Part shown: positions 12,001 to 64,000 of the stretch, piece by piece
Numbering within the stretch: the stretch's first letter is position 1
Layout: each line of letters opens with the position of its first letter
Origin: Auanema rhodensis
Taxonomy: Eukaryota > Animalia > Nematoda
Reading direction: 5' to 3'
Length of the DNA: 64,000 bases
Assembly (NCBI GenBank): GCA_964057225.1
Contig: OZ059897.1
Coordinates: 11,160,001 to 11,224,000 of the forward strand
The notes under the pieces: model-generated
Database searches by the model: none
Seen by the model: only the letters and a program-made list of their open reading frames with translations
Told to the model about the DNA's origin: nothing
Made by a program: the position numbers and the translations under genes

Positions 12001-15000
12001 TTTGTATACTGATCACTTATACGGCGATAGGCTAGAACAGTTCATAACCTTCCTAAATAGATTCCGTTGAATTACCCGAATTAGAGGTAGTATCTTAATC
12101 TAACCAAAGAACTTCTGAGTTGTGAATACATTTTGAAAAGCACACCACGATTGTGCAACATTGAAAACTGTCTGTCTTAGTATGATTACATAACACTTTA
12201 TATGCCTCAGTAAAATGAATTTGAATTTAAATATGAAGCGTCTTTCATATTATACTTTAACCTGATATAGCTTTGTATAGGTTTGTATACTGATCACTTA
12301 TACGGCGATAGGCTAGAACAGTTTATAACTTTCCTAAATAGATTCTGTTGAATCACCCGAGTTAGAGGTAGTATCTCAGTTTAACCAGAGAATTTCTGAC
12401 TTGGAAATATATTTTGAAAACCACACCACGATTGTCCAACATTGAAAACTGTCTGTTTTAGTATGATTTCATAACACTATATATGCCTAAATAAAATGAA
12501 TTTGAATATAATAATGAAGTGTCTTTTATATTATACTTTAACCTGATATAGCTTTGTATAGGTTTGTACACTGATCACATATACGGCGATAGGCTAGAAC
12601 AGTTCATAACTTTCTTAAATAGATTCCGTTGAATCACCCGAGTTAGAGGTAGTATCTCAGTTTAACCAGAGAATTTCTGAAATGTGAATACGTTTTGAAA
12701 AGCACACCACGATTGTGCATTCTTGAAAACTGTCTGTTTTAGTATGATTTCATAACACTATATATGCCTAAATAAAATGAATTTGAATATAAATATGAAG
12801 CGTCTTTTATATTATACTTTAACCTGATATAGCTTTGTATAGGTTTGTACACTGATCACATATATGGCGATAGGCTAGAACAGTTCATAACTTTCCTAAA
12901 TAGATTCTGTTGAATCACCCGAGTGAAAAGAACACCACGATTGTGCAATCTTGAAAACTGTCTGTCTTAGTATGATTACATAACACTTTATATGCCTCAG
13001 TAAAATGAATTTGAATATAAATATGAAGCGTCTTTTATATTAAACTTTAACCTGATATAGCTTTGTATGGGTTTGTATACTGATCACTTATACGGCGATA
13101 GGCTAGAACAGTTCATAACTTACTTAAATAGATTCCGTTGAATCACCCGAGTTAGAGGTACTATCTCAGTTTAACCAGAGAATTTCTGAGTTGGAAATAT
13201 ATTTTAAAAACCACACCACGATTGTGCAATCTTGAAAACTGTCTGTCTTAGTATGATTAAATAACACTTTATATGCCTCAGTAAAATGAACTTGAATATA
13301 AATATGAAGCATCTTTTATATTATACTTTAACCTGATATAGCTTTGTATAGGTTTGTACACTGATCACATATATGGCGATAGGCTAGAACAGTTCATAAC
13401 TTTCCTAAATAGATTCTGTTGAATCACCCGAGTTAGAGGTAGTATCTCAGTTTAACCAGAGAATTTCTGACTTGGAAATATATTTTGAAAACCACACCAC
13501 GATTGTGCAACATTGAAAACTGTCTGTCTTAGTATGATTTCATAACACTATATATGCCTAAGTAAAATGAATTTGAATACAAAAATAAAGCGTCTTTTAT
13601 ATTATACTTTAACCTGATGTAGCTTTGTATAGGTTTGTATACTGATCACTTATACGGCGATAGGCTAGAACAGTTCATAACTTTCCTAAAAAGATTCCGT
13701 TGAATCACCCGAGTTAGAGGTAGTATCTCAGTTTAACCAGAGAATTTCTGAGTTGGAAATATATTTTAAAAACCACACCACGATTGTGCAATCTTGAAAA
13801 CTGTCTGTCTTAGTATGATTAAATAACACTTTATATGCCTCAGTAAAATGAACTTGAATATAAATATGAAGCATCTTTTATATTATACTTTAACCTGATA
13901 TAGCTTTGTATAGGTTTGTACACTGATCACATATATGGCGATAGGCTAGAACAGTTCATAACTTTCCTAAATAGATTCTGTTGAATCACCCGAGTTAGAG
14001 GTAGTATCTCAGTTTAACCAGAGAATTTCTGACTTGGAAATATATTTTGAAAACCACACCACGATTGTCCAACATTGAAAACTGTCTGTTTTAGTATGAT
14101 TTCATAACACTATATATGCCTAAATAAAATGAATTTGAATATAATAATGAAGCGTCTTTTATATTATACTTTAACCTGATATAGCTTTGTATAGGTTTGT
14201 ATACTGATCACATATATGGCGATAGGCTAGAACAGTTCATAACTTTCCTAAATAGATTCTGTTGAATCACCCGAGTGAAAAGAACACCACGATTGTGCAA
14301 TCTTGAAAACTGTCTGTCTTAGTATGATTACATAACACTTTATATGCCTCAGTAAAATGAATTTGAATATAAATATGAAGCGTCTTTTATATTATACTTT
14401 AACCTGATATAGCTTTGTATGGGTTTGTATACTGATCACTTATACGGCGATAGGCTAGAACAGTTCATAACTTACTTAAATAGATTCCGTTGAATCACCC
14501 GAGTTAGAGGTACTATCTCAGTTTAACCAGAGAATTTCTGAGTTGTGAATACATTTTGAAAAGCACACCACGATTGTGCAACATTGAAAACTGTCTGTTT
14601 CAGTATGATTTCATAACACTATATATGCCTAAGTAAAATGAATTTGAATACAAAAATAAAGCGTCTTTTATATTATACTTTAACCTGATGTAGCTTTGTA
14701 TGGAATTGTATACTGATCGCTTATACGGCGATAGGCTAGAACAGTTCATAACTTTCCTAAACATTCCGTTGAATTACCCGAATTAGAGATAGTATCTCAA
14801 TCTAACCAAAAACCTTCTGAGTTGTAAATACATTTTGAAAAGAACACCACGATTGTGCAACATTGGAAAATGTCTGTCTTAGTATGATTACATAACACTT
14901 TATATGCCTAAGTAAAATGAATTTGAATATAAATATGAAGCGTCTTTTGTATTATACTTTAACCTGATATAGCTTTGTATAGGTTTGTATACTGATCACT

Positions 15001-18000
15001 TATACGGCGATAGGCTAGAACAGTTCATAACCTTCCTAAATAGATTCCGTTGAATTACCCGAATTAGAGGTAGTATCTTAATCTAACCAAAAAACTTCTG
15101 AGTTGTATATACATTTTGAAAAGAACACCACGATTGTGCAATCTTGAAAACTGTCTGTCTTAGTATGATTACATAACACTTTATATGCCTAAGTAAAATG
15201 AATTTGAATATAAATATGAAGCGTCTTTTATATTATACTTTAACCTGATGTAGCTTTGTATGGAATTGTATACTGATCGCTTATACGGCGATAGGCTAGA
15301 ACAGTTCATAACTTTCCTAAACATACCGTTGAATTACCCGAATTAGAGATAGTATCTCAATCTAACCAAAAACCTTCTGAGTTGTAAATACATTTTGAAA
15401 AGAACACCACGATTGTGCAACATTGAAAACTGTCTGTCTCAGTATGATTACATAACACTTTATATGCCTAAGTAAAATGAATTTGAATATAAATATGAAG
15501 CGTCTTTTGTATTATACTTTAACCTGATATAGCTTTGTATTGGTTTGTATACTGATCACTTATACGGCGATAGGCTAGAACAGTTCATAACCTTCCTAAA
15601 TAGATTCCGTTGAATTACCCGAATTAGAGGTAGTATCTTAATCTAACCAAAAAACTTCTGAGTTGTATATACATTTTGAAAAGAACACCACGATTGTGCA
15701 ATCTTGAAAACTGTCTGTCTTAGTATGATTACATAACACTTTATATGCCTAAGTAAAATGAATTTGAATATAAATATGAAGCGTCTTTTATATTATACTT
15801 TAACCTGATATAGCTTTGTATAGGTTTGTACCCTGATCACATATACGGCGATAGGCTAGAACAGTTCATAACTTTCCTAAATAGATTCTGTTGAATCACC
15901 CGAGTGAAAAGAACACCACGATTGTGCAATCTTGAAAACTGTCTGTCTTAGTATGATTACATAACACTATATATGCCTCAGTAAAATGAATTTGAATATA
16001 AATATGAAGCGTCTTTTATATTATACTTTAACCTGATATAGCTTTGTATGGGTTTGTATACTGATCACTTATACGGCGATAGGCTAGAACAGTTCATAAC
16101 CTTCCTAAATAGATTCCGTTGAATTACCCGAATTAGAGGTAGTATCTCAATCTAACCAAAGAACTTCTGAGTTGTATATACATTTTGAAAAGAACACCAC
16201 GATTGTGCAATCTTGAAAACTGTCTGTCTTAGTATGATTACATAACACTTTATATGCCTCAGTAAAATGAACTTGAATATAAATATGAAGCGTCTTTTAT
16301 ATTATACTTTAACCTGATATAGCTTTGTATGGGTTTGTATACTGATCACTTATACGGCGATAGGCTAGAACAGTTCATAACTTTCTTAAATAGATTCCGT
16401 TGAATCACCCGAGTTAGAGGTACTATCTCAGTTTAACCAGAGAATTTCTGAGTTGTGAATACATTTTGAAAAGCACACCACGATTGTGCAACATTGAAAA
16501 CTGTCTGTTTCAGTATGATTTCATAACACTATATATGCCTAAGTAAAATGAATTTGAATACAAAAATAAAGCGTCTTTTATATTATACTTTAACCTGATG
16601 TAGCTTTGTATGGAATTGTATACTGATCGCTTATACGGCGATAGGCTAGAACAGTTCATATCTTTCCTAAACATTCCGTTGAATTACCCGAATTAGAGAT
16701 AGTATCTCAATCTAACCAAAAACCTTCTAAGTTGTAAATACATTTTGAAAAGAACACCACGATTGTGCAACATTGAAAACTGTCTGTCTCAGTATGATTA
16801 CATAACACTATATATGCCTAAGTAAAATGAATTTGAATACAAAAATAAAGCGTCTTTTATATTATACTTTAACCTGATGTAGCTTTGTATGGAATTGTAT
16901 ACTGATCGCTTATACGGCGATAGGCTAGAACAGTTCATAACCTTCCTAAATAGATTCCGTTGAATTACCCGAATTAGAGGTAGTATCTCAATCTAACCAA
17001 AGAACTTCTGAGTTGTATATACATTTTGAAAAGAACACCACGATTGTGCAACATTGGAAAATGTCTGTCTTAGTATGATTACATAACACTTTATATGCCT
17101 AAGTAAAATGAATTTGAATATAAATATGAAGCGTCTTTTATATTATACTTTAACCTGATATAGCTTTGTATAGGTTTGTATACTGATCACTTATACGGCG
17201 ATAGGCTAGAACAGTTCATAACCTTCCTAAATAGATTCCGTTGAATTACCCGAATTAGAGGTAGTATCTTAATCTAACCAAAGAACTTCTGAGTTGTATA
17301 TACATTTTGAAAAGAACACCACGATTGTGCAATCTTGAAAACTGTCTGTCTTAGTATGATTACATAACACTATATATGCCTCAGTAAAATGAATTTGAAT
17401 ATAAATATGAAGCGTCTTTTATATTATACTTTAACTTGATATAGCTTTGTATGGGTTTGTATACTGATCACTTATACGGCGATAGGCTAGAACAGTTCAT
17501 AACCTTCCTAAATAGATTCCGTTGAATTACCCGAATTAGAGGTAGTATCTTAATCTAACCAAAGAACTTCTGAGTTGTGAATACATTTTGAAAAGCACAC
17601 CACGATTGTGCAACATTGAAAACTGTCTGTCTTAGTATGATTACATAACACTTTATATGCCTCAGTAAAATGAATTTGAATTTAAATATGAAGCGTCTTT
17701 CATATTATACTTTAACCTGATATAGCTTTGTATAGGTTTGTATACTGATCACTTATACGGCGATAGGCTAGAACAGTTTATAACTTTCCTAAATAGATTC
17801 TGTTGAATCACCCGAGTTAGAGGTAGTATCTCAGTTTAACCAGAGAATTTCTGACTTGGAAATATATTTTGAAAACCACACCACGATTGTCCAACATTGA
17901 AAACTGTCTGTTTTAGTATGATGTCATAACACTATATATGCCTAAATAAAATGAATTTGAATATAATAATGAAGTGTCTTTTATATTATACTTTAACCTG

Positions 18001-21000
18001 ATATAGCTTTGTATAGGTTTGTACACTGATCACATATACGGCGATAGGCTAGAACAGTTCATAACTTTCTTAAATAGATTCCGTTGAATCACCCGAGTTA
18101 GAGGTAGTATCTCAGTTTAACCAGAGAATTTCTGAAATGTGAATACGTTTTGAAAAGCACACCACGATTGTGCATTCTTGAAAACTGTCTGTTTTAGTAT
18201 GATTTCATAACACTATATATGCCTAAATAAAATGAATTTGAATACAATAATGAAGCGTCTTTTATATTATACTTTAACCTGATATAGCTTTGTATAGGTT
18301 TGTACACTGATCACATATATGGCGATAGGCTAGAACAGTTCATAACTTTCCTAAATAGATTCTGTTGAATCACCCGAGTGAAAAGAACACCACGATTGTG
18401 CAATCTTGAAAACTGTCTGTCTTAGTATGATTACATAACACTTTATATGCCTCAGTAAAATGAATTTGAATATAAATATGAAGCGTCTTTTATATTAAAC
18501 TTTAACCTGATATAGCTTTGTATGGGTTTGTATACTGATCACTTATACGGCGATAGGCTAGAACAGTTCATAACTTACTTAAATAGATTCCGTTGAATCA
18601 CCCGAGTTAGAGGTACTATCTCAGTTTAACCAGAGAATTTCTGAGTTGGAAATATATTTTAAAAACCACACCACGATTGTGCAATCTTGAAAACTGTCTG
18701 TCTTAGTATGATTAAATAACACTTTATATGCCTCAGTAAAATGAACTTGAATATAAATATGAAGCATCTTTTATATTATACTTTAACCTGATATAGCTTT
18801 GTATAGGTTTGTACACTGATCACATATATGGAGATAGGCTAGAACAGTTCATAACTTTCCTAAATAGATTCTGTTGAATCACCCGAGTTAGAGGTAGTAT
18901 CTCAGTTTAACCAGAGAATTTCTGACTTGGAAATATATTTTGAAAACCACACCACGATTGTGCAACATTGAAAACTGTCTGTCTTAGTATGATTTCATAA
19001 CACTATATATGCCTAAGTAAAATGAATTTGAATACAAAAATAAAGCGTCTTTTATATTATACTTTAACCTGATGTAGCTTTGTATAGGTTTGTATACTGA
19101 TCACTTATACGGCGATAGGCTAGAACAGTTCATAACTTTCCTAAAAAGATTCCGTTGAATCACCCGAGTTAGAGGTAGTATCTCAGTTTAACCAGAGAAT
19201 TTCTGAGTTGGAAATATATTTTAAAAACCACACCACGATTGTGCAATCTTGAAAACTGTCTGTCTTAGTATGATTAAATAACACTTTATATGCCTCAGTA
19301 AAATGAACTTGAATATAAATATGAAGCATCTTTTATATTATACTTTAACCTGATATAGCTTTGTATAGGTTTGTACACTGATCACATATATGGCGATAGG
19401 CTAGAACAGTTCATAACTTTCCTAAATAGATTCTGTTGAATCACCCTAGTTAGAGGTAGTATCTCAGTTTAACCAGAGAATTTCTGACTTGGAAATATAT
19501 TTTGAAAACCACACCACGATTGTCCAACATTGAAAACTGTCTGTTTTAGTATGATTTCATAACACTATATATGCCTAAATAAAATGAATTTGAATATAAT
19601 AATGAAGCGTCTTTTATATTATACTTTAACCTGATATAGCTTTGTATAGGTTTGTATACTGATCACATATATGGCGATAGGCTAGAACAGTTCATAACTT
19701 TCCTAAATAGATTCTGTTGAATCACCCGAGTGAAAAGAACACCACGATTGTGCAATCTTGAAAACTGTCTGTCTTAGTATGATTACATAACACTTTATAT
19801 GCCTCAGTAAAATGAATTTGAATATAAATATGAAGCGTCTTTTATATTATACTTTAACCTGATATAGCTTTGTATGGGTTTGTATACTGATCACTTATAC
19901 GGCGATAGGCTAGAACAGTTCATAACTTACTTAAATAGATTCCGTTGAATCACCCGAGTTAGAGGTACTATCTCAGTTTAACCAGAGAATTTCTGAGTTG
20001 TGAATACATTTTGAAAAGCACACCACGATTGTGCAACATTGAAAACTGTCTGTTTCAGTATGATTTCATAACACTATATATGCCTAAGTAAAATGAATTT
20101 GAATACAAAAATAAAGCGTCTTTTATATTATACTTTAACCTGATGTAGCTTTGTATGGAATTGTATACTGATCGCTTATACGGCGATAGGCTAGAACAGT
20201 TCATAACTTTCCTAAACATTCCGTTGAATTACCCGAATTAGAGATAGTATCTCAATCTAACCAAAAACCTTCTGAGTTGTAAATACATTTTGAAAAGAAC
20301 ACCACGATTGTGCAACATTGGAAAATGTCTGTCTTAGTATGATTACATAACACTTTATATGCCTAAGTAAAATGAATTTGAATATAAATATGAAGCGTCT
20401 TTTGTATTATACTTTAACCTGATATAGCTTTGTATAGGTTTGTATACTGATCACTTATACGGCGATAGGCTAGAACAGTTCATAACCTTCCTAAATAGAT
20501 TCCGTTGAATTACCCGAATTAGAGGTAGTATCTTAATCTAACCAAAAAACTTCTGAGTTGTATATACATTTTGAAAAGAACACCACGATTGTGCAATCTT
20601 GAAAACTGTCTGTCTTAGTATGATTACATAACACTTTATATGCCTAAGTAAAATGAATTTGAATATAAATATGAAGCGTCTTTTATATTATACTTTAACC
20701 TGATGTAGCTTTGTATGGAATTGTATACTGATCGCTTATACGGCGATAGGCTAGAACAGTTCATAACTTTCCTAAACATACCGTTGAATTACCCGAATTA
20801 GAGATAGTATCTCAATCTAACCAAAAACCTTCTGAGTTGTAAATACATTTTGAAAAGAACACCACGATTGTGCAACATTGAAAACTGTCTGTCTCAGTAT
20901 GATTACATAACACTTTATATGCCTAAGTAAAATGAATTTGAATATAAATATGAAGCGTCTTTTGTATTATACTTTAACCTGATATAGCTTTGTATTGGTT

Positions 21001-22594
21001 TGTATACTGATCACTTATACGGCGATAGGCTAGAACAGTTCATAACCTTCCTAAATAGATTCCGTTGAATTACCCGAATTAGAGGTAGTATCTTAATCTA
21101 ACCAAAAAACTTCTGAGTTGTATATACATTTTGAAAAGAACACCACGATTGTGCAATCTTGAAAACTGTCTGTCTTAGTATGATTACATAACACTTTATA
21201 TGCCTAAGTAAAATGAATTTGAATATAAATATGAAGCGTCTTTTATATTATACTTTAACCTGATATAGCTTTGTATAGGTTTGTACCCTGATCACATATA
21301 CGGCGATAGGCTAGAACAGTTCATAACTTTCCTAAATAGATTCTGTTGAATCACCCGAGTGAAAAGAACACCACGATTGTGCAATCTTGAAAACTGTCTG
21401 TCTTAGTATGATTACATAACACTATATATGCCTCAGTAAAATGAATTTGAATATAAATATGAAGCGTCTTTTATATTATACTTTAACCTGATATAGCTTT
21501 GTATGGGTTTGTATACTGATCACTTATACGGCGATAGGCTAGAACAGTTCATAACCTTCCTAAATAGATTCCGTTGAATTACCCGAATTAGAGGTAGTAT
21601 CTCAATCTAACCAAAGAACTTCTGAGTTGTATATACATTTTGAAAAGAACACCACGATTGTGCAATCTTGAAAACTGTCTGTCTTAGTATGATTACATAA
21701 CACTTTATATGCCTCAGTAAAATGAATTTGAATATAAATATGAAGCGTCTTTTATATTATACTTTAACCTGATATAGCTTTGTATGGGTTTGTATACTGA
21801 TCACTTATACGGCGATAGGCTAGAACAGTTCATAACTTTCTTAAATAGATTCCGTTGAATCACCCGAGTTAGAGGTACTATCTCAGTTTAACCAGAGAAT
21901 TTCTGAGTTGTGAATACATTTTGAAAAGCACACCACGATTGTGCAACATTGAAAACTGTCTGTTTCAGTATGATTTCATAACACTATATATGCCTAAGTA
22001 AAATGAATTTGAATACAAAAATAAAGCGTCTTTTATATTATACTTTAACCTGATGTAGCTTTGTATGGAATTGTATACTGATCGCTTATACGGCGATAGG
22101 CTAGAACAGTTCATAACTTTCCTAAACATTCCGTTGAATTACCCGAATTAGAGATAGTATCTCAATCTAACCAAAAACCTTCTAAGTTGTAAATACATTT
22201 TGAAAAGAACACCACGATTGTGCAACATTGAAAACTGTCTGTCTCAGTATGATTACATAACGCTTTATATGCCTAAGTAAAATGAATTTGAATATAAATA
22301 TGAAGCGTCTTTTATATTATACTTTAACCTGATATAGCTTTGTATAGGTTTGTACACTGATCACATATACGGCGATAGGCTAGAACAGTTCATAACTTTC
22401 CTAAACATTCCGTTTAATTACCCGAATTAGAGGTAGTATCTCAATCTAACCAAAAAACTTCTGAGTTGTAAATACATTCTGAAAAGAACACCACGATTGT
22501 GCAACATTGGAAAATGTCTGTCTTAGTATGATTACATAACACTTTATATGCCTAAGTAAAATGAATTTGAATATAAATATGAAGCGTCTTTTAT
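1..22594 (+). repeat. 281-bp AT-rich tandem satellite array (~80 monomers; 279-bp and 228-bp variants)
   Basis: The motif CACCACGATTGT recurs at 24, 305, 586, 865 and onward (period 281/279). No ORF is reported in the track over this interval. The array runs off the left edge of the window. Confidence 0.98.
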
Positions 22595-22596
22595 TA

Positions 22597-23025
22597 CAAA
22601 TTCATTTTACTTAGGCATATAAAGTGTTATGTAATCATACTAAGACAGACAGTTTTCAAGATTGCACAATCGTGGTGTTCTTTTCAAAATGTATATACAA
22701 CTCAGAAGTTTTTTGGTTAGATTAAGATACTACCTCTAATTCGGGTAATTCAACGGAATCTATTTAGGAAGGTTATGAACTGTTCTAGCCTATCGCCGTA
22801 TAAGTGATCAGTATACAAACCTATACAAAGCTATATCAGGTTAAAGTATAATACAAAAGACGCTTCATATTTATATTCAAATTCATTTTACTTAGGCATA
22901 TAAAGTGTTATGTAATCATACTAAGACAGACATTTTCCAATGTTGCACAATCGTGCTGTTCTTTTCAGAATGTATTTACAACTCAGAAGTTTTTTGGTTA
23001 GATTGAGATACTACCTCTAATTCGG
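22597..23025 (-). repeat. Inverted ~1.5 monomers of the 281-bp satellite
   Basis: CAAATTCATTTTACTTAGGCATATAAAGTG...CTACCTCTAATTCGG is the reverse complement of the satellite. The strand switches at ~22594-22597. Confidence 0.97.
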
Positions 23026-23685
23026 AAAACTAGGAACTAGAACGTAATTGAATTATATGAAACCAAAACTTTTTCGCAAGATTTACCTTCATCGGTTCCG
23101 ATGTAAAGTGCTAAACTAGAATAGTGTTTGTGTGGAATAAAATGAACCTTAGGTCCGACTCCGATTAACTCAAACAACTTATAAACAAATATTGTACGAA
23201 TATCTGCTTGTTGCCAATTTGCTAAACCTATATGTTCTTTAACGTAGTACTTTCCAATCAGAATTTCATTCCGCAATACTTGACAAATGAGCCGGCCCTA
23301 TAGACAATATTGTACAACTATATTTTATATCAAATTTTACCAAAAACTTACCAGGATTCCACCTTCCTCTGATCCATTCCTTTCACATCTGATGTCGAGG
23401 GCTGGGCATTCAGCGTTATTAGCAAAGAAGTTTGAGAAATAAAACTCTGCGGCTATTTCAATGTTTTCGAAATTTTTTTTCCGTGTAGCGCGAGAAATTT
23501 GCATTGAATTGGCAATAAATTTCATCAAATTGATGGTAGGTAACCAGGAATTTAGCTTTCATCAGTGGCATTAGGTGGTTCAAGGCTTGATCAACTGCTT
23601 GTTCAATTTGGGTCATTTGTTTCAATGCGGAAGCTTGTCAAGCCTTTTTGAACTTACTCACAAAAGCTTAACAATTCGCAGTCAT
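23025..23685 (-). pseudogene. Kinase-like copy k0, 3'-truncated at the satellite junction
   Basis: Exons 1-2 and 12 nt of exon 3 are present, then the sequence fuses to the satellite (reads VPSFPN*). There is also a +1 in the exon-1 T-run (~23473-23480). Confidence 0.8.
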
Positions 23686-24167
23686 GATGTCTCTGAAATT
23701 AATAAAATCCATTACAAATATCAAAACATAGATAAAATGAAGATTAAAAAGTATATTGAATATTTTTAAAAGATTCTCAGTGTTGGAAACGCCAGAAATC
23801 TTTTTCAATAAAAAACATAAAATCTTCCTCCACATTTCCAAAAATACATAGACATCTTTCACACGATTAAAATATCATTAAGAAAATCATTAACAATGAG
23901 ATCCCTGCATCAAAATTGCCTATTCTTAGCAATAAAGTTCATTAGCAGTGCATATACCAAGGTAATAACTGTTTATAATAATTTTCAATCTCAAAAACAT
24001 TTTAAATTCATACTCTAATATATCGGCAATATCTGGTCAAAGTATAATGTAAAAGACGCTTTATATTTATATTTAAATTCATATTACTTAGGCATCTTTA
24101 GTCTTATGTGATCATTATAACACAGATATTTTTCGTGACAAATACAGTGTAAAAAATGAAATCTGTT

Positions 24168-25289
24168 TTATTTCAAACTTTCTATCAGACTATTAAGATA
24201 GTTTTTAATTTCTACAGAATATCTCTCAAAGTTTCGACTTGGTTTACAGATGATAGAATGCTTCTTGAACAGCTCTTTTTGTTTGGAGATCGCTGCATTA
24301 GCTTCGTTGAAATTATGGGGTAGATTCCACAATTTAATGCACTTCTTTGCTACTTGAATCCGTAGCTCTTTGCTCCTCTTCCAGCTTTTGTACCCGTTCA
24401 AATATTTGTGTGCCATTTCAGGATCGACACAACTCTTTATCTAAATTACAAAGATCATAATATAAAATGCTTACAATCATACTTGAAGATGAGCAATGCT
24501 CAGTTTCTCATGACCATCAATTCCATAATTCTTCGAGTGGAGATCCTTAGGAAACAGCACTCGCCGCAGCAAGTCCCTTTGAGCGTATACTTTGCTACTC
24601 ACATGAATTCCTTCAGTTTCTGCTCGCCGAAAACTAGGAACTAGAACGTAATTGAATTATATGAAACCAAAACTTTTTCGCAAGATTTACCTTCATCGGT
24701 TTCGATGTAAAGTGCTAAACTAGAATAGTGTTTGTGTGGAATAAAATGAACCTTAGGTCCGACTCCGATTAACTCAAACAACTTATAAACAAATATTGTA
24801 CGAATATCTGCTTGTTGCCAATTTGCTAAACCTATATGTTCTTTAACGTAGTACTTTCCAATCAGAATTTCATTCCGCAATACTTGACAAATGAGCCGGC
24901 CCTATAGACAATATTGTACAACTATATTTTATATCAAATTTTACCAAAAACTTACCAGGATTCCACCTTCCTCTGATCCATTCCTTTCACATCTGATGTC
25001 GAGGGCTGGGCATTCAGCGTTATTAGCAAAGAAGTTTGAGAAATAAAACTCTGCGGCTATTTCAATGTTTTCGAAATTTTTTTTCCGTGTAGCGCGAGAA
25101 ATTTGCATTGAATTGGCAATAAATTTCATCAAATTGATGGTAGGTAACCAGGAATTTAGCTTTCATCAGTGGCATTAGGTGGTTCAAGGCTTGATCAACT
25201 GCTTGTTCAATTTGGGTCATTTGTTTCAATGCGGAAGCTTGTCAAGCCTTTTTGAACTTACTCACAAAAGCTTAACAATTCGCAGTCAT
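24168..25289 (-). pseudogene. Kinase-like copy k1 (frameshift)
   Basis: The exon-1 T-run has 8 T instead of 7 (~25077-25084), and the ORF track shows the shifted frame. Confidence 0.7.
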
Positions 25290-25771
25290 GATGTCTCTGA
25301 AATTAATAAAATCCATTACAAATATCAAAACATAGATAAAATGAAGATTAAAAAGTATATTGAATATTTTTAAAAGATTCTCAGTGTTGGAAACGCCAGA
25401 AATCTTTTTCAATAAAAAACATAAAATCTTCCTCCACATTTCCAAAAATACATAGACATCTTTCACACGATTAAAATATCATTAAGAAAATCATTAACAA
25501 TGAGATCCCTGCATCAAAATTGCCTATTCTTAGCAATAAAGTTCATTAGCAGTGCATTTACCAAGGTAATAACTGTTTATAATAATTTTCAATCTCAAAA
25601 ACATTTTAAATTCATACTCTAATATATCGGCAATATCTGGTCAAAGTATAATGTAAAAGACGCTTTATATTTATATTTAAATTCATATTACTTAGGCATC
25701 TTTAGTCTTATGTGATCATTATAACACAGATATTTTTCGTGACAAATACAGTGTAAAAAATGAAATCTGTT

Positions 25772-26891
25772 TTATTTCAAACTTTCTATCAGACTATTAA
25801 GATAGTTTTTAATTTCTACAGAATATCTCTCAAAGTTTCGACTTGGTTTACAGATAATAGAATGCTTCTTGAACAGCTCTTTTTGTTTGGAGATCGCTGC
25901 ATTAGCTTCGTTGAAATCATGGGGTAGATTCCACAATTTAATGCACTTCTTCGCTACTTGAATCCGTAGCTCTTTGCTCCTCTTCCAGCTTTTGTACCCG
26001 TTCAAATATTTCTGTGCCATTTCCGGATCGACACAACTCTTTATCTAAATTACAAAGATCATAATATAAAATGCTTACAATCATACTTGAAGATCAGCAA
26101 TGCTCAGTTTCCCATGACCATCAATTCCATAATTCTTCGAGTGAAGATCCTTAGGAAACAGCACTCGCCGCAGCAAGTCCCTTTGAGCGTATACTTTGCT
26201 ACTCACATGAATTCCTTCAGTTTCTGCTCGCCGAAAACTAGGAACTATAACGTAATTGAATTATATGAAACCAAAACTTTTTCGCAAGATTCACCTTCAT
26301 CGGTTCCGATGTAAAGTGCTAAACTAGAATAGTGTTTGTGTGGAATAAAATGAACCTTAGGTCCGACTCCGATCAACTCAAACAACTTATAAACAAATAT
26401 TTTACGAATATCTGCTTGTTCCCAATTTGCTAAACCTATATGTTCTTTAACGTAGTACTTTCCAATCAGAATTTCATTCCGCAATACTTGACAAATGAGC
26501 CCGCCCTATAGACAATATTGTACAACTATATTTTATATCAAATTTTACCAAAAACTTACCAGGATTCCACCTTCCACTGATCCATTCCTTTCACATCTGA
26601 TGTCGAGGGCTGGGCATTCAGCGTTATCAGCAAAGAAGTTTGAGAAACAAAACTCTGCGGCTATTTCAATGTATTCAAATTTTTTTCCATGTAGCGAGAG
26701 AAATTTGCATTGAATTGGCAATAAATTTCATCAAATTGATGGTAGGTGACCAGGAATTTAGCTTTCATCAGTGGCATTAGGTGGTTCAAGGCTTGATCAA
26801 CTGCTTGTTCAATTTGGGTCATTTGTTTCAATGCGGAAGCTTGTCAAGCCCTTTTGAACTTACTCACACAAGCTTAACAATTTGCAGTCAT
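25772..26891 (-). pseudogene. Kinase-like copy k2 (frameshift)
   Basis: 1-bp deletion in exon 1 (GTATTCAAAT vs GTATTCGAAAT, ~26676). Confidence 0.7.
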
Positions 26892-27373
26892 GATGTCTCT
26901 GAAAATAATAAAATCCATTACAAATATTAAAACATAGATAAAATGAAGATTAAAAAGTTTATTGAATATTTTTAAAAGATTCTCAGTGTTGGAAACGCCA
27001 GAAATCTTTTTCGATTAAAAACATAAAATCTTCCTCCACATTTCCAAAAATACATAGACATCTTTCACACGATTAAAATATCATTAAAAAAATCATTAAC
27101 AATGAGATCCCTGCATCAAAATTGCCTATTCTTAGCAATAAAGTTCATCAGCGGTGCATATACCAAGGTAATAACTGTTTATAATAATTTTCAATCTCAA
27201 AAACATTTTAAATTCATACTCTAATATATCGACAATATCAGGTCAAAGTATAATGTAAAAGACGCTTTATATTTATATTTAAATTCATATTACTTAGGCA
27301 TCTTTAGTCTTATGTGATCATTATAACACAGATATTTTTTGTGACAAATACAGTGTAAAAAATGAAACCTGTT

Positions 27374-28425
27374 TTATTTCAAACTTTCTATCAGACTATT
27401 AAGATCGTTTTTAATTTCTACAGAATATCTCTCAAAGTTTCGACTTGGTTTACAGATGATAGAATGCTTCTTGAACAGCTCTTTTTGTTTGGAGATCGCT
27501 GCATTAGCTTCGTTGAAATTATGGGGTAGATTCCACAATTTAATGCACTTCTTTGCTACTTGAATCCGTAGCTCTTTGCTCCTTTTCCAGTTTTTGTACC
27601 CGTTCAAATATTTGTGTGCCATTTCAGGATCGACACAACTCTTTATCTAAATTACAAAGATCATAATATAAAATGCTAACAATCATACTTGAAGATCAGC
27701 AATGCTCAGTTTCCCATGACCATCAATTCCATAATTCTTCGAGTGGAGATCCTTTGGAAACAGCACTCGCCGCAGCAAGTCCCTTTGAGCGTATACTTTG
27801 CTACTCACATGAATTCCTTCTGTTTCTGCTCGCCGAAAACTAGGAACTAGAACGTAATTGAATTATATGAAACCAAAACTTTTTCGCAAGATTTACCTTC
27901 ATCGGTTCCGATGTAAAGTGCTAAACTAGAATAGTGTTTGTGTGGAATAAAATGAACCTTAGGTCCGACTCCGATCAACTCAAACAACTTATAAACAAAT
28001 ATTTTACGAATATCTGCTTGTTGCCAATTTGCTAAACCTATATGTTCTTTAACGTAGTACTTTCCAATCAGAATTTCATTCCGCAATACTTGACAAATGA
28101 GCCGGCCCTATAGACAATATTGTACAACTATATTTTATATCAAATTTTACCAAAAACTTACCAGGATTCCACCTTCCTCTGATCCATTCCTTTCACATCT
28201 GATGTCGAGGGCTGGGCATTCAGCGTTATCAGCAAAGAAATTTGAGAAATAATACTCTGCGGCTATTTCAATGTATTCGAAATTTTTTTCCATGTAGCGA
28301 GAGAAATTTGCATTGAATTGGCAATGAATTTCATCAAATTGATGGTAGGTAACCAGGAATTTAGCTTTCATCAGTGGCATTAAGTGGTTCAAGGCTTGAT
28401 CAACTGCTTGTTCAATTTGGGTCAT
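27374..28425 (-). CDS. Kinase-like copy k3, open from internal Met (MTQIEQ), ~301 aa, ADL variant
   Basis: All four exons appear open and the splice sites appear intact. The upstream ATG is followed by TAA at codon 6. Confidence 0.55.
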
Positions 28426-28892
28426 TTGTTTCAAAGCGGAAGCTTGTCGAGCCCTTTTGAACTCACTCACAAAAGCTTAACAATTCGCAGTCATGATGTC
28501 TCTGAAATTTATAAAATCCATTACAAATATCAAAATATGAACAAATTGAAGATTAAAAAGTATATTGAATATTTTTAAAGGATTCTCAGTGTTGGAAACG
28601 CCAGAAATCTCTTCCGATTAAAAACATAAAATCTACCTCCACATTTCCAAAAATACATAGACATCTTTCACACGATTAAAATATCATTAAAAAAATCATT
28701 AACAATGAGATCCCTGCTACAAAATTGCCTATTCTTAGCAATAAAGTTCATCAGCAGTGCATATACCAATGTAATAACTGTTTATAATAATTTTCAATCT
28801 CAAAAACATTTTAAATTCATACTCTACTATGTTTACATTATCAGGTCAAAGTATAATGTAAAAGATGCTTTGTATTTATATTCAAATTCATA

Positions 28893-30097
28893 TTACTTAG
28901 GCATCTTTAGTGTTATGTGATCATTATAACACACATATTTTTCGTAACAAGTACAGTGTAAAAAATGAAACCTGTTATATTTCAAACTTTCTATCAGACT
29001 ATTAAAATCGTTGTTAATCTCTACGAAATATTTCACAAAGTTTCGACTTGGTTTACAGATAATAGAATGCTTCTTGAACAGCTCTTTTTGTTTGGAGATC
29101 GCTGCATTAGCTTCGTTGAAATCATGGGGTAGATTCCACAATTTAATGCACTTCTTTGCTACTTGAATCCGTAGCTCTTTGCTCGTCTTCCAGCTTCTGT
29201 ACCCGTTCAAATATTTGTGTGCCATTTCAGGATCGACACAACTCTTTATCTAAATTACAAAGATCATAATATAAAATGCTAACAATCATACTTGAAGATC
29301 AGCAATGCTCAGTTTCCCATGACCATCAATTCCATAATTCTTCGAGTGGAGATCCTTAAGAAACAGCACTCGCGGCAGCAAGTCCCTTTGAGCGTATACT
29401 TTGCTACTCACATGAATTCCTTCAGTTTCTGCTCGCCGAAAACTAGGAACTAGAACGTAATTGAATTATAAGAAACCAAAACTTTTTCGCAAGATTTACC
29501 TTCATCGGTTCAGATGTAAAGTGCTAAACTAGAATAGTGTTTGTGTGGAATAAAATGAACCTTAGGTCCGACTCCGATCAACTCAAACAACTTATAAACA
29601 AATATTTTACGAATATCTGCTTGTTGCCAATTCGCTAAACCTATATGTTCTTTAACGTAGTACTTTCCAATCAGAATTTCATTCCGCAATACTTGACAAA
29701 TGAGCCGGTTCTATAGACAATTTTGTACAATTATATTTTATATCAAATTTTACCAAAAACTCACCAGGATTCCACCTTCCTCTGATCCATTCCTTTCACA
29801 TCTGATGTCGAGGGCTGGGCATTCAGCGTTATCAGCAAAGAAATTTGAGAAATAATACTCTGCGGCTATTTCAATGTATTCGAAATTTTTTTCCATGTAG
29901 CGAGAGAAATTTGCATTGAATTGGCAATGAATTTCATCAAATTGATGGTAGGTAACCAGGAATTTAGCTTTCATCATTGGCATTAGGTGGTTCAAGGCTT
30001 GATCAACTGCTTGTTCAATTTGGGTCATTTGTTTCAAAGCGGAAGCTTGTCGAGCCCTTTTGAACTTACTCACAAAAGCTTAACAATTCGCAGTCAT
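28893..30097 (-). pseudogene. Kinase-like copy k4 (exon-2 nonsense)
   Basis: GGA>TGA near the end of exon 2 (plus strand GGTTCAGATG, ~29510). The natural stop is also changed to TAT. Confidence 0.7.
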
Positions 30098-30579
30098 GAT
30101 GTCTCTGAAATTTATAAAATCCATTACAAATATCAAAATATGAACAAATTGAAGATTAAAAAGTATATTGAATATTTTTAAAGGATTCTCAGTGTTGGAA
30201 ACGCCAGAAATCTCTTCCGATTAAAAACATAAAATCTTCCTCCACATTTCCAAAAATACATAGACCTCTTTCACACGATTAAAATATCATTTAAAAAATC
30301 ATTAACAATGAGATCCCTGCATCAAAATTGCCTATTCTTAGCAATAAAGTTTATCAGCAGTGCATATACCAATGTAATAACTGTTTATAATAATTTTCAA
30401 TCTCAAAAACATTTTAAATTCATACTCTACTATGTTTACATTATCAGGTCAAAGTATAATGTAAAAGATGCTTTATATTTATATTTAAATTCATATTACT
30501 TAGGCATCTTTAGTCTTATGTGATCATTATAACACAGATATTTTTCGTGACAAATACAGTGTAAAAAATGAAACCTGTT

Positions 30580-31701
30580 TTATTTCAAACTTTCTATCAG
30601 ACTATTAAAATCGTTGTTAATTTCTACGAAATATTTCACAAAGTTTCGACTTGGTTTACAGATAATAGAATGCTTCTTGAACAGCTCTTTTTGTTTGGAG
30701 ATCGCTGCATTAGCTTCGTTGAAATCATGGGGTAGATTCCACAATTTAATGCACTTCTTTGCTACTTGAATCCGTAGCTCTTTGCTCCTCTTCCAGCTTT
30801 TGTACCCGTTCAAATATTTCTGTGCCATTTCCGGATCGACACAACTCTTTATCTAAATTACAAAGATCATAATATAAAATGCTTACAATCATACTTGAAG
30901 ATCAGCAATGCTCAGTTTCCCATGACCATCAATTCCATAATTGTTCGAGTGGAGATCCTTAGGAAACAGCACTCGCCGCAGCAAGTCCCTTTGAGCGTAT
31001 ACTTTGCTACTCACATGAATTCCTTCAGTTTCTGCTCGCCGAAAACTAGGAACTAGAACGTAATTGAATTATATGAAACCAAAACTTTTTCGCAAGATTT
31101 ACCTTCATCGGTTCCGATGTAAAGTGCTAAACTAGAATAGTGTTTGTGTGGAATAAAATGAACCTTAGGTCCGACTCCGATCAACTCAAACAACTTATAA
31201 ACAAATATTTTACGAATATCTGCTTGTTGCCAATTTGCTAAACCTATATGTTCTTTAACGTAGTACTTTCCAATCAGAATTTCATTCCGCAATACTTGAC
31301 AAATGAGCCGGCCATATAGACAATTTTGTACAATTATATTTTATATCAAATTTTACCAAAAACATACCAGGATTCCACCTTCCTCTGATCCATTCCTTTC
31401 ACATCTGATGTCGAGGGCTGGGCATTCAGCGTTATCAGCAAAGAAATTTGAGAAATAATACTCTGCGGCTATTTCAATGTTTTCGAAATTTGTTTTCCGT
31501 GTAGCGAGAGAAATTTGCATTGAATTGGCAATAAATTTCATCAAATTGATGGTAGGTGACCAGGAATTTAGCTTTCATCAGTGGCATTAGGTGGTTCAAG
31601 GCTTGATCAACTGCTTGTTCAATTTGGGTCATTTGTTTCAGTGCGGAAGCTTGTCAAGCCCTTTTGAACTTACTCACACAAGCTTAACAATTTGCAGTCA
31701 T
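30580..31701 (-). pseudogene. Kinase-like copy k5 (frameshift, intron-1 acceptor lost)
   Basis: +1 in the exon-1 T-run (~31490), and the intron-1 acceptor AG is changed to AT at ~31314. Confidence 0.7.
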
Positions 31702-31941
31702 GATGTCTCTGAAAATAATAAAATCCATTACAAATATTAAAACATAGATAAAATGAAGATTAAAAAGTATATTGAATATTTTTAAAAGATTCTCAGTGTT
31801 GGAAACGCCAGAAATCTTTTTCGATTGAAAACATAAAATCTTCCTCCACATTTCCAAAAATACATAGACATCTTTCACACGATTAAAATATCATTAAAAA
31901 AATCATTAACAATGATTTCCCTGCTACAAAATTGCCTATTC

Positions 31942-33110
31942 TTAGCAATAAAGTTCATCAGCAGTGCATATACCAAGGTAATGACTGTTTATAATAATTT
32001 TCAATCTCAAAAACACATATTTTTCGTAACAAATACAGTGTAAAAAATGAAACCTGTTATATTTCAAACTTTCTATCAGACTATTAAAATCGTTGTTAAT
32101 TTCTACGAAATATTTCACAAAGTTTCGACTTGGTTTACAGATAATAGAATGCTTCTTGAACAGCTCTTTTTGTTTGGAGATCGCTGCATTAGCTTCGTTG
32201 AAATCATGGGGTAGATTCCACAATTTAATGCACTTCTTTGCTACTTGAATCCGTAGCTCTTTGCTCCTCTTCCAGCTTCTGTACCCGTTCAAATATTTCT
32301 GTGCCATTTCCGGATCGACACAACTTTTTATCTAAATTACAAAGATCATAATATAAAATGCTTACAATCATACTTGAAGATCAGCAATGCTCAGTTTCCC
32401 ATGACCATCAATTCCATAATTGTTCGAGTGGAGATCCTTAGGAAACAGCACTCGCCGCAGCAAGTCCCTTTGAGCGTATACTTTGCTACTCACATGAATT
32501 CCTTCAGTTTCTGCTCGCCGAAAACTAGGAACTAGAACGTAATTGAATTATATGAAACCAAAACTTTTTCGCAAGATTTACCTTCATCGGTTCCGATGTA
32601 AAGTGCTAAACTAGAATAGTGTTTGTGTGGAATAAAATGAACCTTAGGTCCGACTCCGATCAACTCAAACAACTTATAAACAAATATTTTACGAATATCT
32701 GCTTGTTGCCAATTTGCTAAACCTATATGTTCTTTAACGTAGTACTTTCCAATCAAAATTTCATTCCGCAATACTTGACAAATGAGCCGGCCCTATAGAC
32801 AATTTTGTACAATTATATTTTATATCAAATTTTACCAAAAACATACCAGGATTCCACCTTCCTCTGATCCATTCCTTTCACATCTGATGTCGAGGGCTGG
32901 GCATTCAGCGTTATCAGCAAAGAAATTTGAGAAATAATACTCTGCGGCTATTTCAATGTATTCGAAATTTTTTTCCATGTAGCGAGAGAAATTTGCATTG
33001 AATTGGCAATGAATTTCATCAAATTGATGGTAGGTAACCAGGAATTTAGCTTTCATCAGTGGCATTAGGTGGTTCAAGGCTTGATCAACTGCTTGTTCAA
33101 TTTGGGTCAT
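31942..33110 (-). CDS. Kinase-like copy k6, open from internal Met, stop lost and C-terminus extended across a 125-bp deletion
   Basis: Exons appear open (catalytic loop DLHSNN). TAA>TAT read-through continues to 31942. Confidence 0.45.
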
Positions 33111-33522
33111 TTGTTTCAATGCGGAAGCTTGTCAAGCCCTTTTGAACTTACTCACACAAGCTTAACAATTTGCAGTCATGATGTCTCTGAAAATAATAAA
33201 ATCCATTACAAATATTAAAACATAGATAAAATGAAGATTAAAAAGTATATTGAATATTTTTAAAAGATTCTCAGTGTTGGAAACGCCAGAAATCTTTTTC
33301 GATTGAAAACATAAAATCTTCCTCCACATTTCCAAAAATACATAGACATCTTTCACACGATTAAAATATCATTAAAAAAATCATTAACAATGAGATCCCT
33401 GCATCAAAATTGCCTATTCTTAGCAATAAAGTTCATCAGCAGTGCATATGCCAAGGTAATAACTGTTTATAATAATTTTCAATCTCAAAAACATTTTAAA
33501 CTCATACTCTAATATATCGACA

Positions 33523-33628
33523 ATATCAGGTCAAAGTATAATGTAAAAGACGCTTTATATTTATATTTAAATTCATATTACTTAGGCATCTTTAGTGTTA
33601 TGTGATCATAATAACACACATATTTTTC
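33523..33628 (-). other. ~106-bp satellite-homologous box in the intergenic part of the 1.6-kb unit (example; also 24029-24134 and every unit except the deleted one)
   Basis: Ungapped manual alignment to 22833-22938 gives about 91/106 identical positions. Confidence 0.92.
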
Positions 33629-33661
33629 GTAACAAATACAGTGTAAAAAATGAAACCTGTT

Positions 33662-34782
33662 ATATTTCAAACTTTCTATCAGACTATTAAAATCGTTGTT
33701 AATTTCTACGAAATATTTCACAAAGTTTCGACTTGGTTTACAGATAATAGAATGCTTCTTGAACAGCTCTTTTTGTTTGGAGATCGCTGCATTAGCTTCG
33801 TTGAAATCATGGGGTAGATTTCACAATTTAATGCACTTCTTTGCTACTTGAATCCGTAGCTCTTTGCTCGTCTTCCAGCTTCTGTACCCGTTCAAATATT
33901 TGTGTGCCATTTCAGGATCGACACAACTCTTTATCTAAATTACAAAGATCATAATATAAAATGCTAACAATCATACTTGAAGATCAGCAATGCTCAGTTT
34001 CCCATGACCATCAATTCCATAATTCTTCGAGTGGAGATCCTTAAGAAACAGCACTCGCCGCAGCAAGTCCCTTTGAGCGTATACTTTGCTACTCACATGA
34101 TATCCTTCAGTTTCTGCTCGCCGAAAACTAGGAACTAGAACGTAATTGAATTATAAGAAACCAAAACTTTTTTGCAAGATTTACCTTCATCGGTTCAGAT
34201 GTAAAGTGCTAAACTAGAATAGTGTTTGTGTGGAATAAAATAAACCTTAGGTCCGACTCCGATCAACTCAAACAACTTATAAACAAATATTTTACGAATA
34301 TCTGCTTGTTGCCAAATTGCTAAACCTATATGTTCTTTAACGTAGTACTTTCCAATCAGAATTTCATTCCGCAATACTTGACAAATGAGCCGGCCCTATA
34401 GACAATTTTGTACAATTATATTTTATATCAAATTTTACCAAAAACTTACCAGGATTCCACCTTCCTCTGATCCATTCCTTTCACATCTGATGTCGAGGGC
34501 TGGGCATTCAGCGTTATCAGCAAAGAAATTTGAGAAATAATACTCTGCGGCTATTTCAATGTATTCGAAATTTTTTTCCATGTAGCGAGAGAAATTTGCA
34601 TTGAATTGGCAATGAATTTCATCAAATGGATGGTAGGTAACCAGGAATTTAGCTTTCATCATTGGCATTAGGTGGTTCAAGGCTTGATCAACTGCTTGTT
34701 CAATTTGGGTCATTTGTTTCAAAGCGGAAGCTTGTCGAGCCCTTTTGAACTTACTCACAAAAGCTTAACAATTCGCAGTCAT
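33662..34782 (-). pseudogene. Kinase-like copy k7 (two nonsense codons)
   Basis: GGA>TGA in exon 2 (~34196) and TGG>TGA in exon 4 (~33821). Confidence 0.7.
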
Positions 34783-35264
34783 GATGTCTCTGAAATTTAT
34801 AAAATCCATTACAAATATCAAAATATGAACAAATTGAAGATTAAAAAGTATATTGTATATTTTTAAAGGATTCTCAGTGTTGGAAACGCCAGAAATCTCT
34901 TCCGATTAAAAACATAAAATCTTCCTCCACATTTCCAAAAATACATAGACATCTTTCACACGATTAAAATATCATTAAAAAAATCATTAACAATGAGATC
35001 CCTGCATCAAAATTGCCTATTCTTAGCAATAAAGTTCATCAGCAGTGCATATACCAATGTAATAACTGTTTATAATAATTTTCAATCTCAAAAACATTTT
35101 AAATTCATACTCTACTATGTTTACATTATCAGGTCAAAGTATAATGTAAAAGATGCTTTATATTTATATTTAAATTCATATTACTTAGGCATTTTTAGTT
35201 TTATGTGATCATTATAACACAGATATTTTTCGTGACAAATACAGTGTAAAAAATGAAACCTGTT

Positions 35265-49189: not shown

Positions 49190-49196
49190 GATGTCT

Positions 49197-63943: not shown

Positions 63944-64000
63944 ATTGCCTAATCTTAGCGATAAAGTTCATCAGCAGTGCATATACCAAGGTAATAACTG

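What the first reader, a model, noticed from the sequence alone, without database searches (positions are those of the whole stretch)
22833..24134. The 281-bp satellite and the kinase unit share a ~106-bp box
Seen: ATATCAGGTYAAAGTATAAT..AAAAGACGCTT.ATATTTATATT.AAATTCAT.TTACTTAGGCAT...AGTGTTATGT.ATCAT aligns ungapped between the satellite (22833-22938) and the unit (33523-33628, ~86%; the copy at 24029-24134 is more diverged). I see no clear similarity outside the box. On the gene strand it lies ~33 nt after one stop codon and ~345-450 nt before the next ATG, and contains TATAAATA. Inference, three options: the gene was captured in a satellite monomer and amplified by satellite recombination (as described for Dox-family genes and the 359-bp satellite in Drosophila); the satellite arose from the gene's promoter/terminator; or the box is a conserved protein-binding module (centromeric or other) shared by the two arrays.
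Basis: partly seen in the sequence, partly recalled or inferred. Interest (0 to 1): 0.85.

Follow-up and report, generated by a model that had tools for sequence, protein, structure and literature searches.

The report
Satellite scrap inside amplified gene copies
The shared 109-letter box is real, but it is most likely a leftover piece of satellite DNA that sat next to a gene and was copied along when a truncated version of that gene was amplified into a tandem array. It is an example of a known kind of genome rearrangement, not a shared functional module.

Summary
Observation confirmed. Satellite consensus positions 98-206 and the start of the 1,603-bp unit align ungapped over 109 nt at 85% identity, z about 38 against shuffles. 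The edges are sharp and nothing outside aligns.

The explanation comes from another chromosome. At C8:13.586-13.588 Mb one intact six-exon gene of 404 aa (ubiquitin-like domain plus atypical kinase-like domain) lies inside an array of the same satellite family. Its 3' end abuts the satellite at exactly the box's gene-side edge (position 206), and there the satellite monomer runs on whole. Spliced RNA contigs carry 40 of 40 C8-specific bases, so this copy is expressed.

The window's unit is a cut-down copy. It starts inside intron 2 of that gene, lacks the promoter and the ubiquitin-like exons, and ends 109 bp into the satellite. About 24 units stand head to tail. They evolve neutrally (dN/dS 0.87), and the box is their most variable stretch.

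The genome holds about 2,500 satellite monomers but only 30 gene-type junctions. So the box is a passenger fragment of satellite. "Gene captured in satellite" is partly right. "Satellite born from the gene" and "conserved binding module" find no support.

The earlier notes of this scan that I looked up did not report this explanation.

The parts
1..22594 (-). 281-bp satellite array. It is in the orientation opposite to the unit boxes and includes recurring 228-bp deletion-variant monomers.
   Evidence: TRF; monomer BLAST and 62-monomer consensus
22595..23025 (+). About 1.5 satellite monomers in inverted orientation. They form a fold-back junction at 22594/22595 and end at satellite position about 12, against unit position 601.
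   Evidence: the hairpin shows only as sub-threshold miRNA-like Rfam hits
22830..22938 (+). The box inside a satellite monomer (satellite consensus positions 98-206).
23025..24025 (-). First unit, truncated. It holds unit positions 601-1596, so it is a second, unrelated satellite/unit joint.
24026..24134 (+). Box copy at the start of the first complete unit.
24029..61558 (-). Head-to-tail array of about 24 units of 1,603 bp, 95-98.6% alike. Each unit is the box plus exons 3-6 of a ubiquitin-like/kinase-like gene plus part of its intron 2.
33520..33628 (+).
35265..35537 (-). Example unit: last exon (equivalent to exon 6 of the C8 gene). The stop codon at 35265-35267 overlaps an AATAAA.
   Evidence: ORF; splice joint in RNA contigs; sequence
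35582..35737 (-). Example unit: exon 5 equivalent, holding the catalytic-loop motif DLHSKN.
35788..35998 (-). Example unit: exon 4 equivalent.
36055..36392 (-). Example unit: exon 3 equivalent. It has an in-unit ATG at 36385-36383, followed by a TAA at codon 6 in 21 of 22 copies.
36393..36729 (-). Example unit: remnant of intron 2 of the parent gene. The unit ends here, so the promoter and exons 1-2 are absent.
61559..62966 (.). 1,408-bp element with terminal inverted repeats and a TA target duplication, inserted in the last unit.
62967..64000 (-). Rest of the interrupted unit, with a 291-bp internal tandem duplication.

Best explanation
The box is a fragment of the 281-bp satellite, inherited by descent at a satellite/gene junction. 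It is not an independently shared functional element.

Shown: a complete ubiquitin-like plus kinase-like gene lies inside an array of this satellite on contig C8. Its 3' end, about 35 nt past the stop codon, is joined to satellite position 206.

Inferred: a 1.6-kb piece of such a locus was duplicated. It ran from satellite position 98 through exons 6-3 to a point inside intron 2. It was then amplified head to tail on contig C5, beside another array of the same satellite. This gave about 24 units in the window and smaller derived arrays nearby.

The copies lack the promoter and the ubiquitin-like exons and drift neutrally, so the array behaves as a gene-derived macrosatellite. The box is a passenger that marks where the copied segment ended.
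For: 1. On C8 the satellite monomer reads 1-206 without a break (L031 5250-5045) and runs straight into the same gene sequence that follows the box in the units. The match to the satellite ends at the same base in both loci.
2. The 41 nt next to the gene (satellite 166-206) are 93% identical between the C8 junction and the C5 unit. They share five derived bases that neither satellite subfamily has. This points to one junction event, older than the C5/C8 split.
3. The C8 gene is complete: 6 exons and 404 aa, collinear with the Caenorhabditis homologues P0002 and P0004. Spliced RNA contigs match it at 40 of 40 diagnostic bases.
4. The C5 unit ends inside C8 intron 2. The promoter and exons 1-2 have no close copy elsewhere in the genome; the only other matches are 67-70% paralogues on C8 at 6.35-6.40 Mb.
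5. In C5 the far edge of the box (satellite position 98) is simply the unit-to-unit joint. In C8 the satellite continues past it.
6. The C8 insert is flanked by satellite in one orientation, with positions about 156-206 present on both sides, as expected for insertion into an existing array.
7. There are about 2,500 satellite monomers and 30 gene-type junctions, all of them next to copies of this gene.
8. There is no sign of constraint. dN/dS between the C5 consensus and C8 is 0.87, and the within-array non-synonymous to synonymous ratio is 0.91. A stop at codon 6 occurs in 21 of 22 copies, and 13 of 22 carry further stops or frameshifts. The box window ranks 3rd most variable of 1,497.
Against: - No outgroup or empty site was available, so the order of events is argued from parsimony, not rooted.
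- The C8 junction monomer is a mosaic: C8-satellite-like up to about position 165 and unit-like after. This could mean that a gene-plus-box segment moved into C8 by recombination within the box.
- The distal part of the unit box is closer to the C5 satellite (90%) than to the C8 satellite (81%), so the founding locus may have been on C5 and since lost.
- Absence of C5-type transcripts rests on three small sets of assembled contigs whose RNA status the tool marks as a guess. These cannot show absence.
- About 9 of 22 units keep an open frame from an internal methionine, so some coding use is not excluded.
Confidence: 0.8

Rival explanations
1. Satellite-mediated dispersal, as described for Dox and the 359-bp satellite. 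In this reading the box is the homology that moved the gene. A gene-plus-box segment recombined with satellite monomers and so jumped between satellite arrays on C5 and C8. The same homology seeded the amplification.
For: - In the C8 junction monomer, identity switches sharply near satellite position 165, from 97% C8-satellite-like to 93% unit-like.
- All gene copies lie in or beside arrays of this satellite on two chromosomes.
- The Dox precedent describes insertion into existing 359-bp satellite blocks.
Against: - The same mosaic is expected if the local array homogenised the junction monomer up to a conversion-tract end.
- The other side of the C8 insert and the C5 unit-to-unit joint are not satellite-to-satellite joins.
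- The unit period of 1,603 bp is not in satellite register.
Confidence: 0.3
2. The box is kept because it works in both arrays, either as a promoter or TATA element for the next gene copy, as a 3'-end or terminator element, or as a protein-binding or small-RNA target site.
For: - The box lies just downstream of the AATAAA that overlaps the stop codon, and it contains TATAAATA.
- Within the C5 satellite it is slightly less variable than the rest of the monomer (0.964 against 0.941 major-allele frequency).
Against: - It is the most variable window of the unit, ranking 3 of 1,497.
- Between the satellite subfamilies the box is 86% conserved against 91% outside it.
- It matches no Rfam family and has no unusual fold.
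- The expressed C8 gene has its own promoter upstream of exon 1, and the RNA contigs stop before the box.
- The satellite has next to no words in the RNA contig sets.
Confidence: 0.08
3. The satellite arose from the gene's 3' flank. A 281-bp stretch downstream of the gene was tandemly duplicated and spread.
For: On the 3' side of the C8 gene the array does begin right at the gene, at satellite position 206.
Against: - Only two monomers lie on that side, while at least 13 kb of satellite lie on the 5' side in the same orientation, with about 50 bp duplicated around the insert.
- Only 109 of 281 bp are shared with the unit.
- There are about 2,500 monomers on at least two contigs, and satellite words also occur in DNA runs under two other organism labels.
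- The more distant paralogue clusters gave no box match.
Confidence: 0.04

Closest known systems
Dox-superfamily genes flanked by 359-bp (1.688) satellite in the Drosophila simulans clade (bioRxiv 10.1101/2021.08.05.454923, read)
   Same: A gene copy is inserted in an existing satellite block, with satellite on both sides. Derived copies carry satellite pieces, and copy number changes recently and locally.
   Different: - This is a nematode, and the gene is a ubiquitin-like/kinase-like one, not protamine-derived.
- The main product is a strict head-to-tail array of truncated, neutrally drifting copies, not dispersed intact genes.
- No drive phenotype or hairpin-RNA suppressor is shown.
- The joints are not demonstrably satellite-to-satellite.
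Gene-derived macrosatellites and ampliconic pseudogene arrays, such as Stellate/Su(Ste) in Drosophila or D4Z4 and TSPY arrays in humans
   Same: Kilobase-sized units that hold a gene or gene fragment plus a scrap of another repeat, amplified head to tail and homogenised.
   Different: Here the parent gene, the junction and both breakpoints of the founding segment can be read directly. No function of the array is known.
Atypical protein-kinase-like fold (actin-fragmin kinase, PI4K type II, HipA, CtkA, MavQ)
   Same: The C-terminal domain model matches these at Z 9.6-10.6 over 187-230 residues. The family keeps Lys, Glu, Asp-x4-Asn and Asp in kinase order.
   Different: No Pfam or PDB sequence match. 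There is an N-terminal ubiquitin-like domain (Z 12-13). The expressed C8 copy has Ser in place of the loop Asn.

Membership tests
Satellite-associated gene duplication (Dox/359-type) | Gene copies flanked by the satellite on one or both sides | tested here: met
   The C8 copy has satellite on both sides. Every C5 unit carries 109 bp of it, and the window's array abuts the satellite.
Satellite-associated gene duplication (Dox/359-type) | Insertion into an existing satellite block, shown by an empty satellite site in relatives | not testable with these tools
   No relative's assembly is reachable. The only indirect support is the same orientation of the flanking satellite and the about 50-bp duplication of satellite 156-206 around the C8 insert.
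Satellite-associated gene duplication (Dox/359-type) | New copies joined through satellite-to-satellite homology | tested here: inconclusive
   The mosaic junction monomer on C8 is compatible with this. The C5 unit joint (satellite position 98 to intron 2) and the left C8 joint are not satellite-to-satellite.
Gene-derived macrosatellite / amplified pseudogene array | Head-to-tail units over 1 kb that contain a gene fragment | tested here: met
   About 24 units of 1,603 bp holding exons 3-6 only.
Gene-derived macrosatellite / amplified pseudogene array | No purifying selection on the coding part | tested here: met
   dN/dS is 0.87 against the C8 gene and the within-array ratio is 0.91. Exons and introns are equally conserved, and stops and frameshifts are present.
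Shared functional cis-module (promoter, terminator or binding box) | Higher conservation than the flanking sequence | tested here: not met
   The box is the most variable part of the unit, and it is 86% against 91% conserved between the satellite subfamilies.
Shared functional cis-module (promoter, terminator or binding box) | Transcript starts or ends, or factor binding, map to the box | tested here: inconclusive
   Only assembled contigs were available. They end 3-39 nt from the stop codon, before the box, and cannot show true RNA ends.
Protein-kinase-like superfamily (atypical) | Kinase fold | tested here: met
   The AlphaFold model has pLDDT 86. The top 14 matches at Z 8 or more are all atypical kinases.
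Protein-kinase-like superfamily (atypical) | Catalytic Lys, Glu, Asp..Asn and Asp residues | tested here: met
   These are nearly invariant across 22 homologues. The C5 consensus keeps DLHSKN, while the C8 copy reads DLHWKS.
Protein-kinase-like superfamily (atypical) | Match to a curated kinase family model | tested here: not met
   No Pfam kinase hit for the exons or for ten full-length homologues, and no PDB sequence hit.

The most novel reading that the evidence does not exclude
The truncated copies are not junk but a silencing device. Two blocks of units in opposite orientation on C5, plus a truncated unit facing a satellite fold-back, could yield antisense or hairpin small RNAs against the expressed C8 parent gene. 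This would resemble Su(Ste)/Stellate or Nmy/Dox. In that case the satellite-derived box would tie the gene copies to the small-RNA and heterochromatin machinery that acts on the satellite.
Probability: 0.08. Interest if true: 0.7.

Novelty: new member of a known kind. Interest (0 to 1): 0.33.

Why it matters
It gives a fully readable example in a Caenorhabditis-like nematode of how a satellite array takes in a working gene and then spawns a kilobase-unit "macrosatellite" from a fragment of it. The parent gene, the junction and both breakpoints are all still visible. It also warns against reading sequence shared between two repeat families as a functional module. Here common descent at one junction explains it. 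The case bears on how satellite-rich regions create and destroy gene copies, but it does not reveal a new mechanism.

Tried and rejected
- Pfam on single exons and on ten full-length homologues gave only weak ubiquitin hits and no kinase family. A profile search of PDB sequences gave nothing.
- The first Foldseek run on the whole model gave kinase hits with poor TM-scores (0.2-0.3), and the second look was filled by ubiquitin. Folding the C-terminal part alone settled the fold.
- The look-up of encoding contigs for P0002 found no record.
- The best short Logan proteins (P0001, P0005 and others) proved to be paralogues from elsewhere, not transcripts of the C5 units.
- Rfam over 22000-25700 gave only sub-threshold miRNA-like hits on the satellite fold-back, and nothing on the box.
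- DNA folding of the box on both strands was unremarkable, with z between -1 and +1.4.
- Two 2026 Caenorhabditis preprints, on programmed DNA elimination and on T2T genomes, mention no kinase or ubiquitin-like gene (searched only in the first) and no 281-bp unit (searched only in the second). The species was not identified.
- I first thought the intron-3 acceptor was lost in the C5 units. It is lost in only 2 of 22 copies.

Full report
**Layout of the window**

- The window is G000:C5:11160001-11224000 of a 181-Mb nematode assembly. Earlier notes of this scan call it a nematode. The gene's homologues come from Caenorhabditis tropicalis and C. sp. 36.
- Bases 1-22594 are a 281-bp satellite.
- At 22594/22595 the array folds back, and about 1.5 monomers follow in the opposite orientation, up to 23025.
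- From 23025 to 61558 lie one truncated unit and about 24 complete units of 1,603 bp, which are 95-98.6% alike. TRF missed them because its longest period is 500.
- The unit carries a spliced gene on the minus strand.

- The box recurs once per unit, in 23 copies, and once per satellite monomer.
- Consensus against consensus, 109 nt align without gaps at 93/109 identity: satellite positions 98-206 against the last 3 nt of one unit plus unit positions 1-106. Identity falls to random on both sides.
- The local score is 77, against 14.0 +/- 1.7 in 200 shuffles.
- The stated distances to the stop codon and to the next ATG are correct, and the TATAAATA is there.

**What the gene is**

- A profile of the best-conserved exon finds 91 proteins. 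The full-length ones are 375-430 aa. Two are named "Ubiquitin-like domain-containing protein" (C. tropicalis) and "unnamed protein product" (C. sp. 36).
- Pfam sees only a weak ubiquitin domain.
- AlphaFold models are confident, with pLDDT 86-88.
- The N-terminus is a ubiquitin fold: Z 12-13, rmsd 1.2 Å over 71 residues.
- For the C-terminal 315 residues, every match at Z 8 or more is an atypical kinase. These include CtkA, actin-fragmin kinase, MavQ, HipA, PI4K II-alpha, CotH, Rio2 and Fam20, at Z 8.1-10.6 over 187-230 residues.
- Lys, Glu, Asp-x4-Asn and Asp are nearly invariant in 22 homologues.
- "Kinase-like" is therefore supported by fold and motifs. It is not supported by any curated family, and no activity is known.

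**The key locus on C8**

- A genome search with the box found, besides the C5 arrays and the satellite, one place on contig C8.
- There (locus L031) a single copy 90.6% identical to the unit lies in a 281/291-bp variant of the same satellite.
- At least 13 kb of satellite lie on the gene's 5' side, and two monomers lie on its 3' side.
- The monomer next to the gene reads 1-206 without interruption and passes straight into the gene's 3' flank. Similarity to the satellite ends at the same base as in the C5 unit.
- On the other side the satellite resumes at about position 156-158. About 50 bp are therefore present on both sides of a 2.1-kb insert, in the same orientation.
- The insert holds a complete gene of six exons and 404 aa, collinear with P0002 and P0004.
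- Three contig sets of the same organism label contain a 1.2-kb contig with three short introns removed. The tool guesses they are RNA, and the spliced form supports that. All 40 listed differences from the C5 unit equal the C8 base, and the per-exon difference counts (20, 15, 18, 29) match exactly. The C8 copy is therefore transcribed and spliced.

**What the C5 unit is**

- The unit's far end aligns to the inside of C8 intron 2.
- The promoter and exons 1-2 have no close copy elsewhere in the genome. The only other matches are paralogues of 67-70% identity at C8:6.35-6.40 Mb.
- Each unit therefore holds 109 bp of satellite, about 35 bp of 3' flank, exons 6-3, and a piece of intron 2.
- After the in-unit ATG there is a TAA at codon 6 in 21 of 22 copies. 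Thirteen of the 22 have further stops or frameshifts, and about nine keep an open frame from an internal methionine.
- dN/dS between the C5 consensus and C8 is 0.87. Intron divergence is 8.2% and dS is 0.11. Within the array, non-synonymous and synonymous variants occur at a ratio of 0.91 per site.
- Exons and introns are equally conserved among units, and the box is the least conserved 106-bp window, ranking 3 of 1,497.

**Origin of the box**

- The 41 nt nearest the gene (satellite 166-206) are 93% identical between the C8 junction and the C5 unit but only 78-80% identical to either satellite consensus. Five derived bases are shared. The satellite/gene joint is thus a single event, older than the roughly 9-10% divergence of the two gene copies.
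- The distal 68 nt differ. On C8 they are 97% like the local satellite. In the unit they are 90% like the C5 satellite and 81% like the C8 satellite. Either the local array homogenised the junction monomer up to a conversion-tract end, or recombination within the box moved the gene.
- In C5 the distal edge of the box is simply the unit-to-unit joint, where satellite position 98 meets intron 2. A GATATWG heptamer stands on both sides of that joint, which may hint at microhomology. This is inference.
- Genome-wide, a 25-mer from outside the box hits about 2,500 times, with 0 hits for the control. A 28-mer across the gene-type junction hits 30 times: 29 on C5 in three arrays and one on C8.
- The satellite cannot have arisen by tandem duplication of the present gene flank, because only 109 of its 281 bp are shared. 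The truncated C5 unit cannot be the parent of the complete C8 gene.
- The most economical history has three steps. First, a gene copy landed in an existing satellite array. Second, a 1.6-kb piece of such a locus was duplicated, with one breakpoint in the neighbouring monomer and one in intron 2. Third, that piece was amplified.

**Function of the box**

- I found no evidence for one.
- Between the satellite subfamilies the box is less conserved (86%) than the rest of the monomer (91%).
- It matches no Rfam family and has no unusual fold.
- The stop codon of the gene overlaps an AATAAA. From what is generally known of nematode 3' ends, cleavage is therefore expected before the satellite junction. 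The RNA contigs end 3-39 nt from the stop, before the box, but contigs cannot show real ends.
- The satellite has next to no words in the RNA contig sets. DNA runs of this organism and of two other organism labels hold it.

**Comparison and verdict**

- The nearest described case is the Dox superfamily, whose copies sit in and spread through 359-bp satellite blocks.
- The similarity is that a gene sits embedded in satellite and the derived copies carry satellite scraps.
- The differences are that the product here is a strict tandem array of truncated, neutrally evolving copies, and that no satellite-to-satellite joint, drive or suppressor is shown.
- I file the finding as a new member of a known kind, of moderate-to-low interest.
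- The most novel reading still open is a small-RNA silencing role for the inverted C5 arrays against the C8 parent gene.

**Limits**

- No outgroup was available.
- Genome searches score only the best candidates.
- RNA evidence is from small contig sets only.
- The species was not identified.

Noticed in passing
window 22512-22654 (centre 22594/22595): Fold-back junction in the satellite. The reverse-orientation monomer breaks at about satellite position 124 and joins to the forward orientation at about position 146, making a near-perfect hairpin inside the box region. Rfam reports only sub-threshold miRNA-precursor look-alikes there.
   Followed up: partly
window 2537-21586: Monomers of 228-229 bp (deletion variants) recur in the satellite at spacings of 1352, 1629 and 2474 bp. 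This gives a higher-order repeat of 5,455 bp, for example 12696 to 18151, 14048 to 19503 and 15677 to 21132.
   Followed up: no
window 61559-62966; also L033 8137-9587 and three places in L034: A 1,408-bp element with terminal inverted repeats and a TA target duplication sits in the last unit of the window's array. The same insertion with its flanks, 99.8-99.9% identical, is repeated with a 2,814-bp period in an inverted array at C5:11.357-11.369 Mb. That array was therefore seeded from a unit carrying the same insertion, such as the one at the window's end.
   Followed up: partly
L031 4539-4696 (C8:13.5875 Mb) against window 35582-35737: The expressed, intact C8 gene has DLHWKS in the catalytic loop, so the near-invariant Asn is replaced by Ser. 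The decaying C5 copies keep DLHSKN. The parent may be a pseudokinase.
   Followed up: no
C8:6349238-6402475 (L040, L041): A distant paralogue cluster of the same ubiquitin-like/kinase-like family, about 30% protein identity. Its members are arranged in tandem, mostly about 3.2 kb apart, and it has no box.
   Followed up: partly
L031 2927-3010 against unit positions 1418-1502: A piece of about 85 bp lies in the intron-2 remnant in the C5 unit. On C8 it lies inverted, right against the left satellite junction, and it is missing from C8 intron 2. This is unexplained.
   Followed up: no
window 32010-32015: One unit-to-unit joint has lost the end of one unit and the first 90 bp of the next, which is most of the box.
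   Followed up: no
window 63362-63948: A 291-bp tandem duplication (2 copies, 97% alike) inside the last, interrupted unit.
   Followed up: no
window 21000-22590: Words of the satellite are held by DNA runs under two further organism labels (shares 0.24 and 0.21). The satellite may therefore be shared with close relatives.
   Followed up: no
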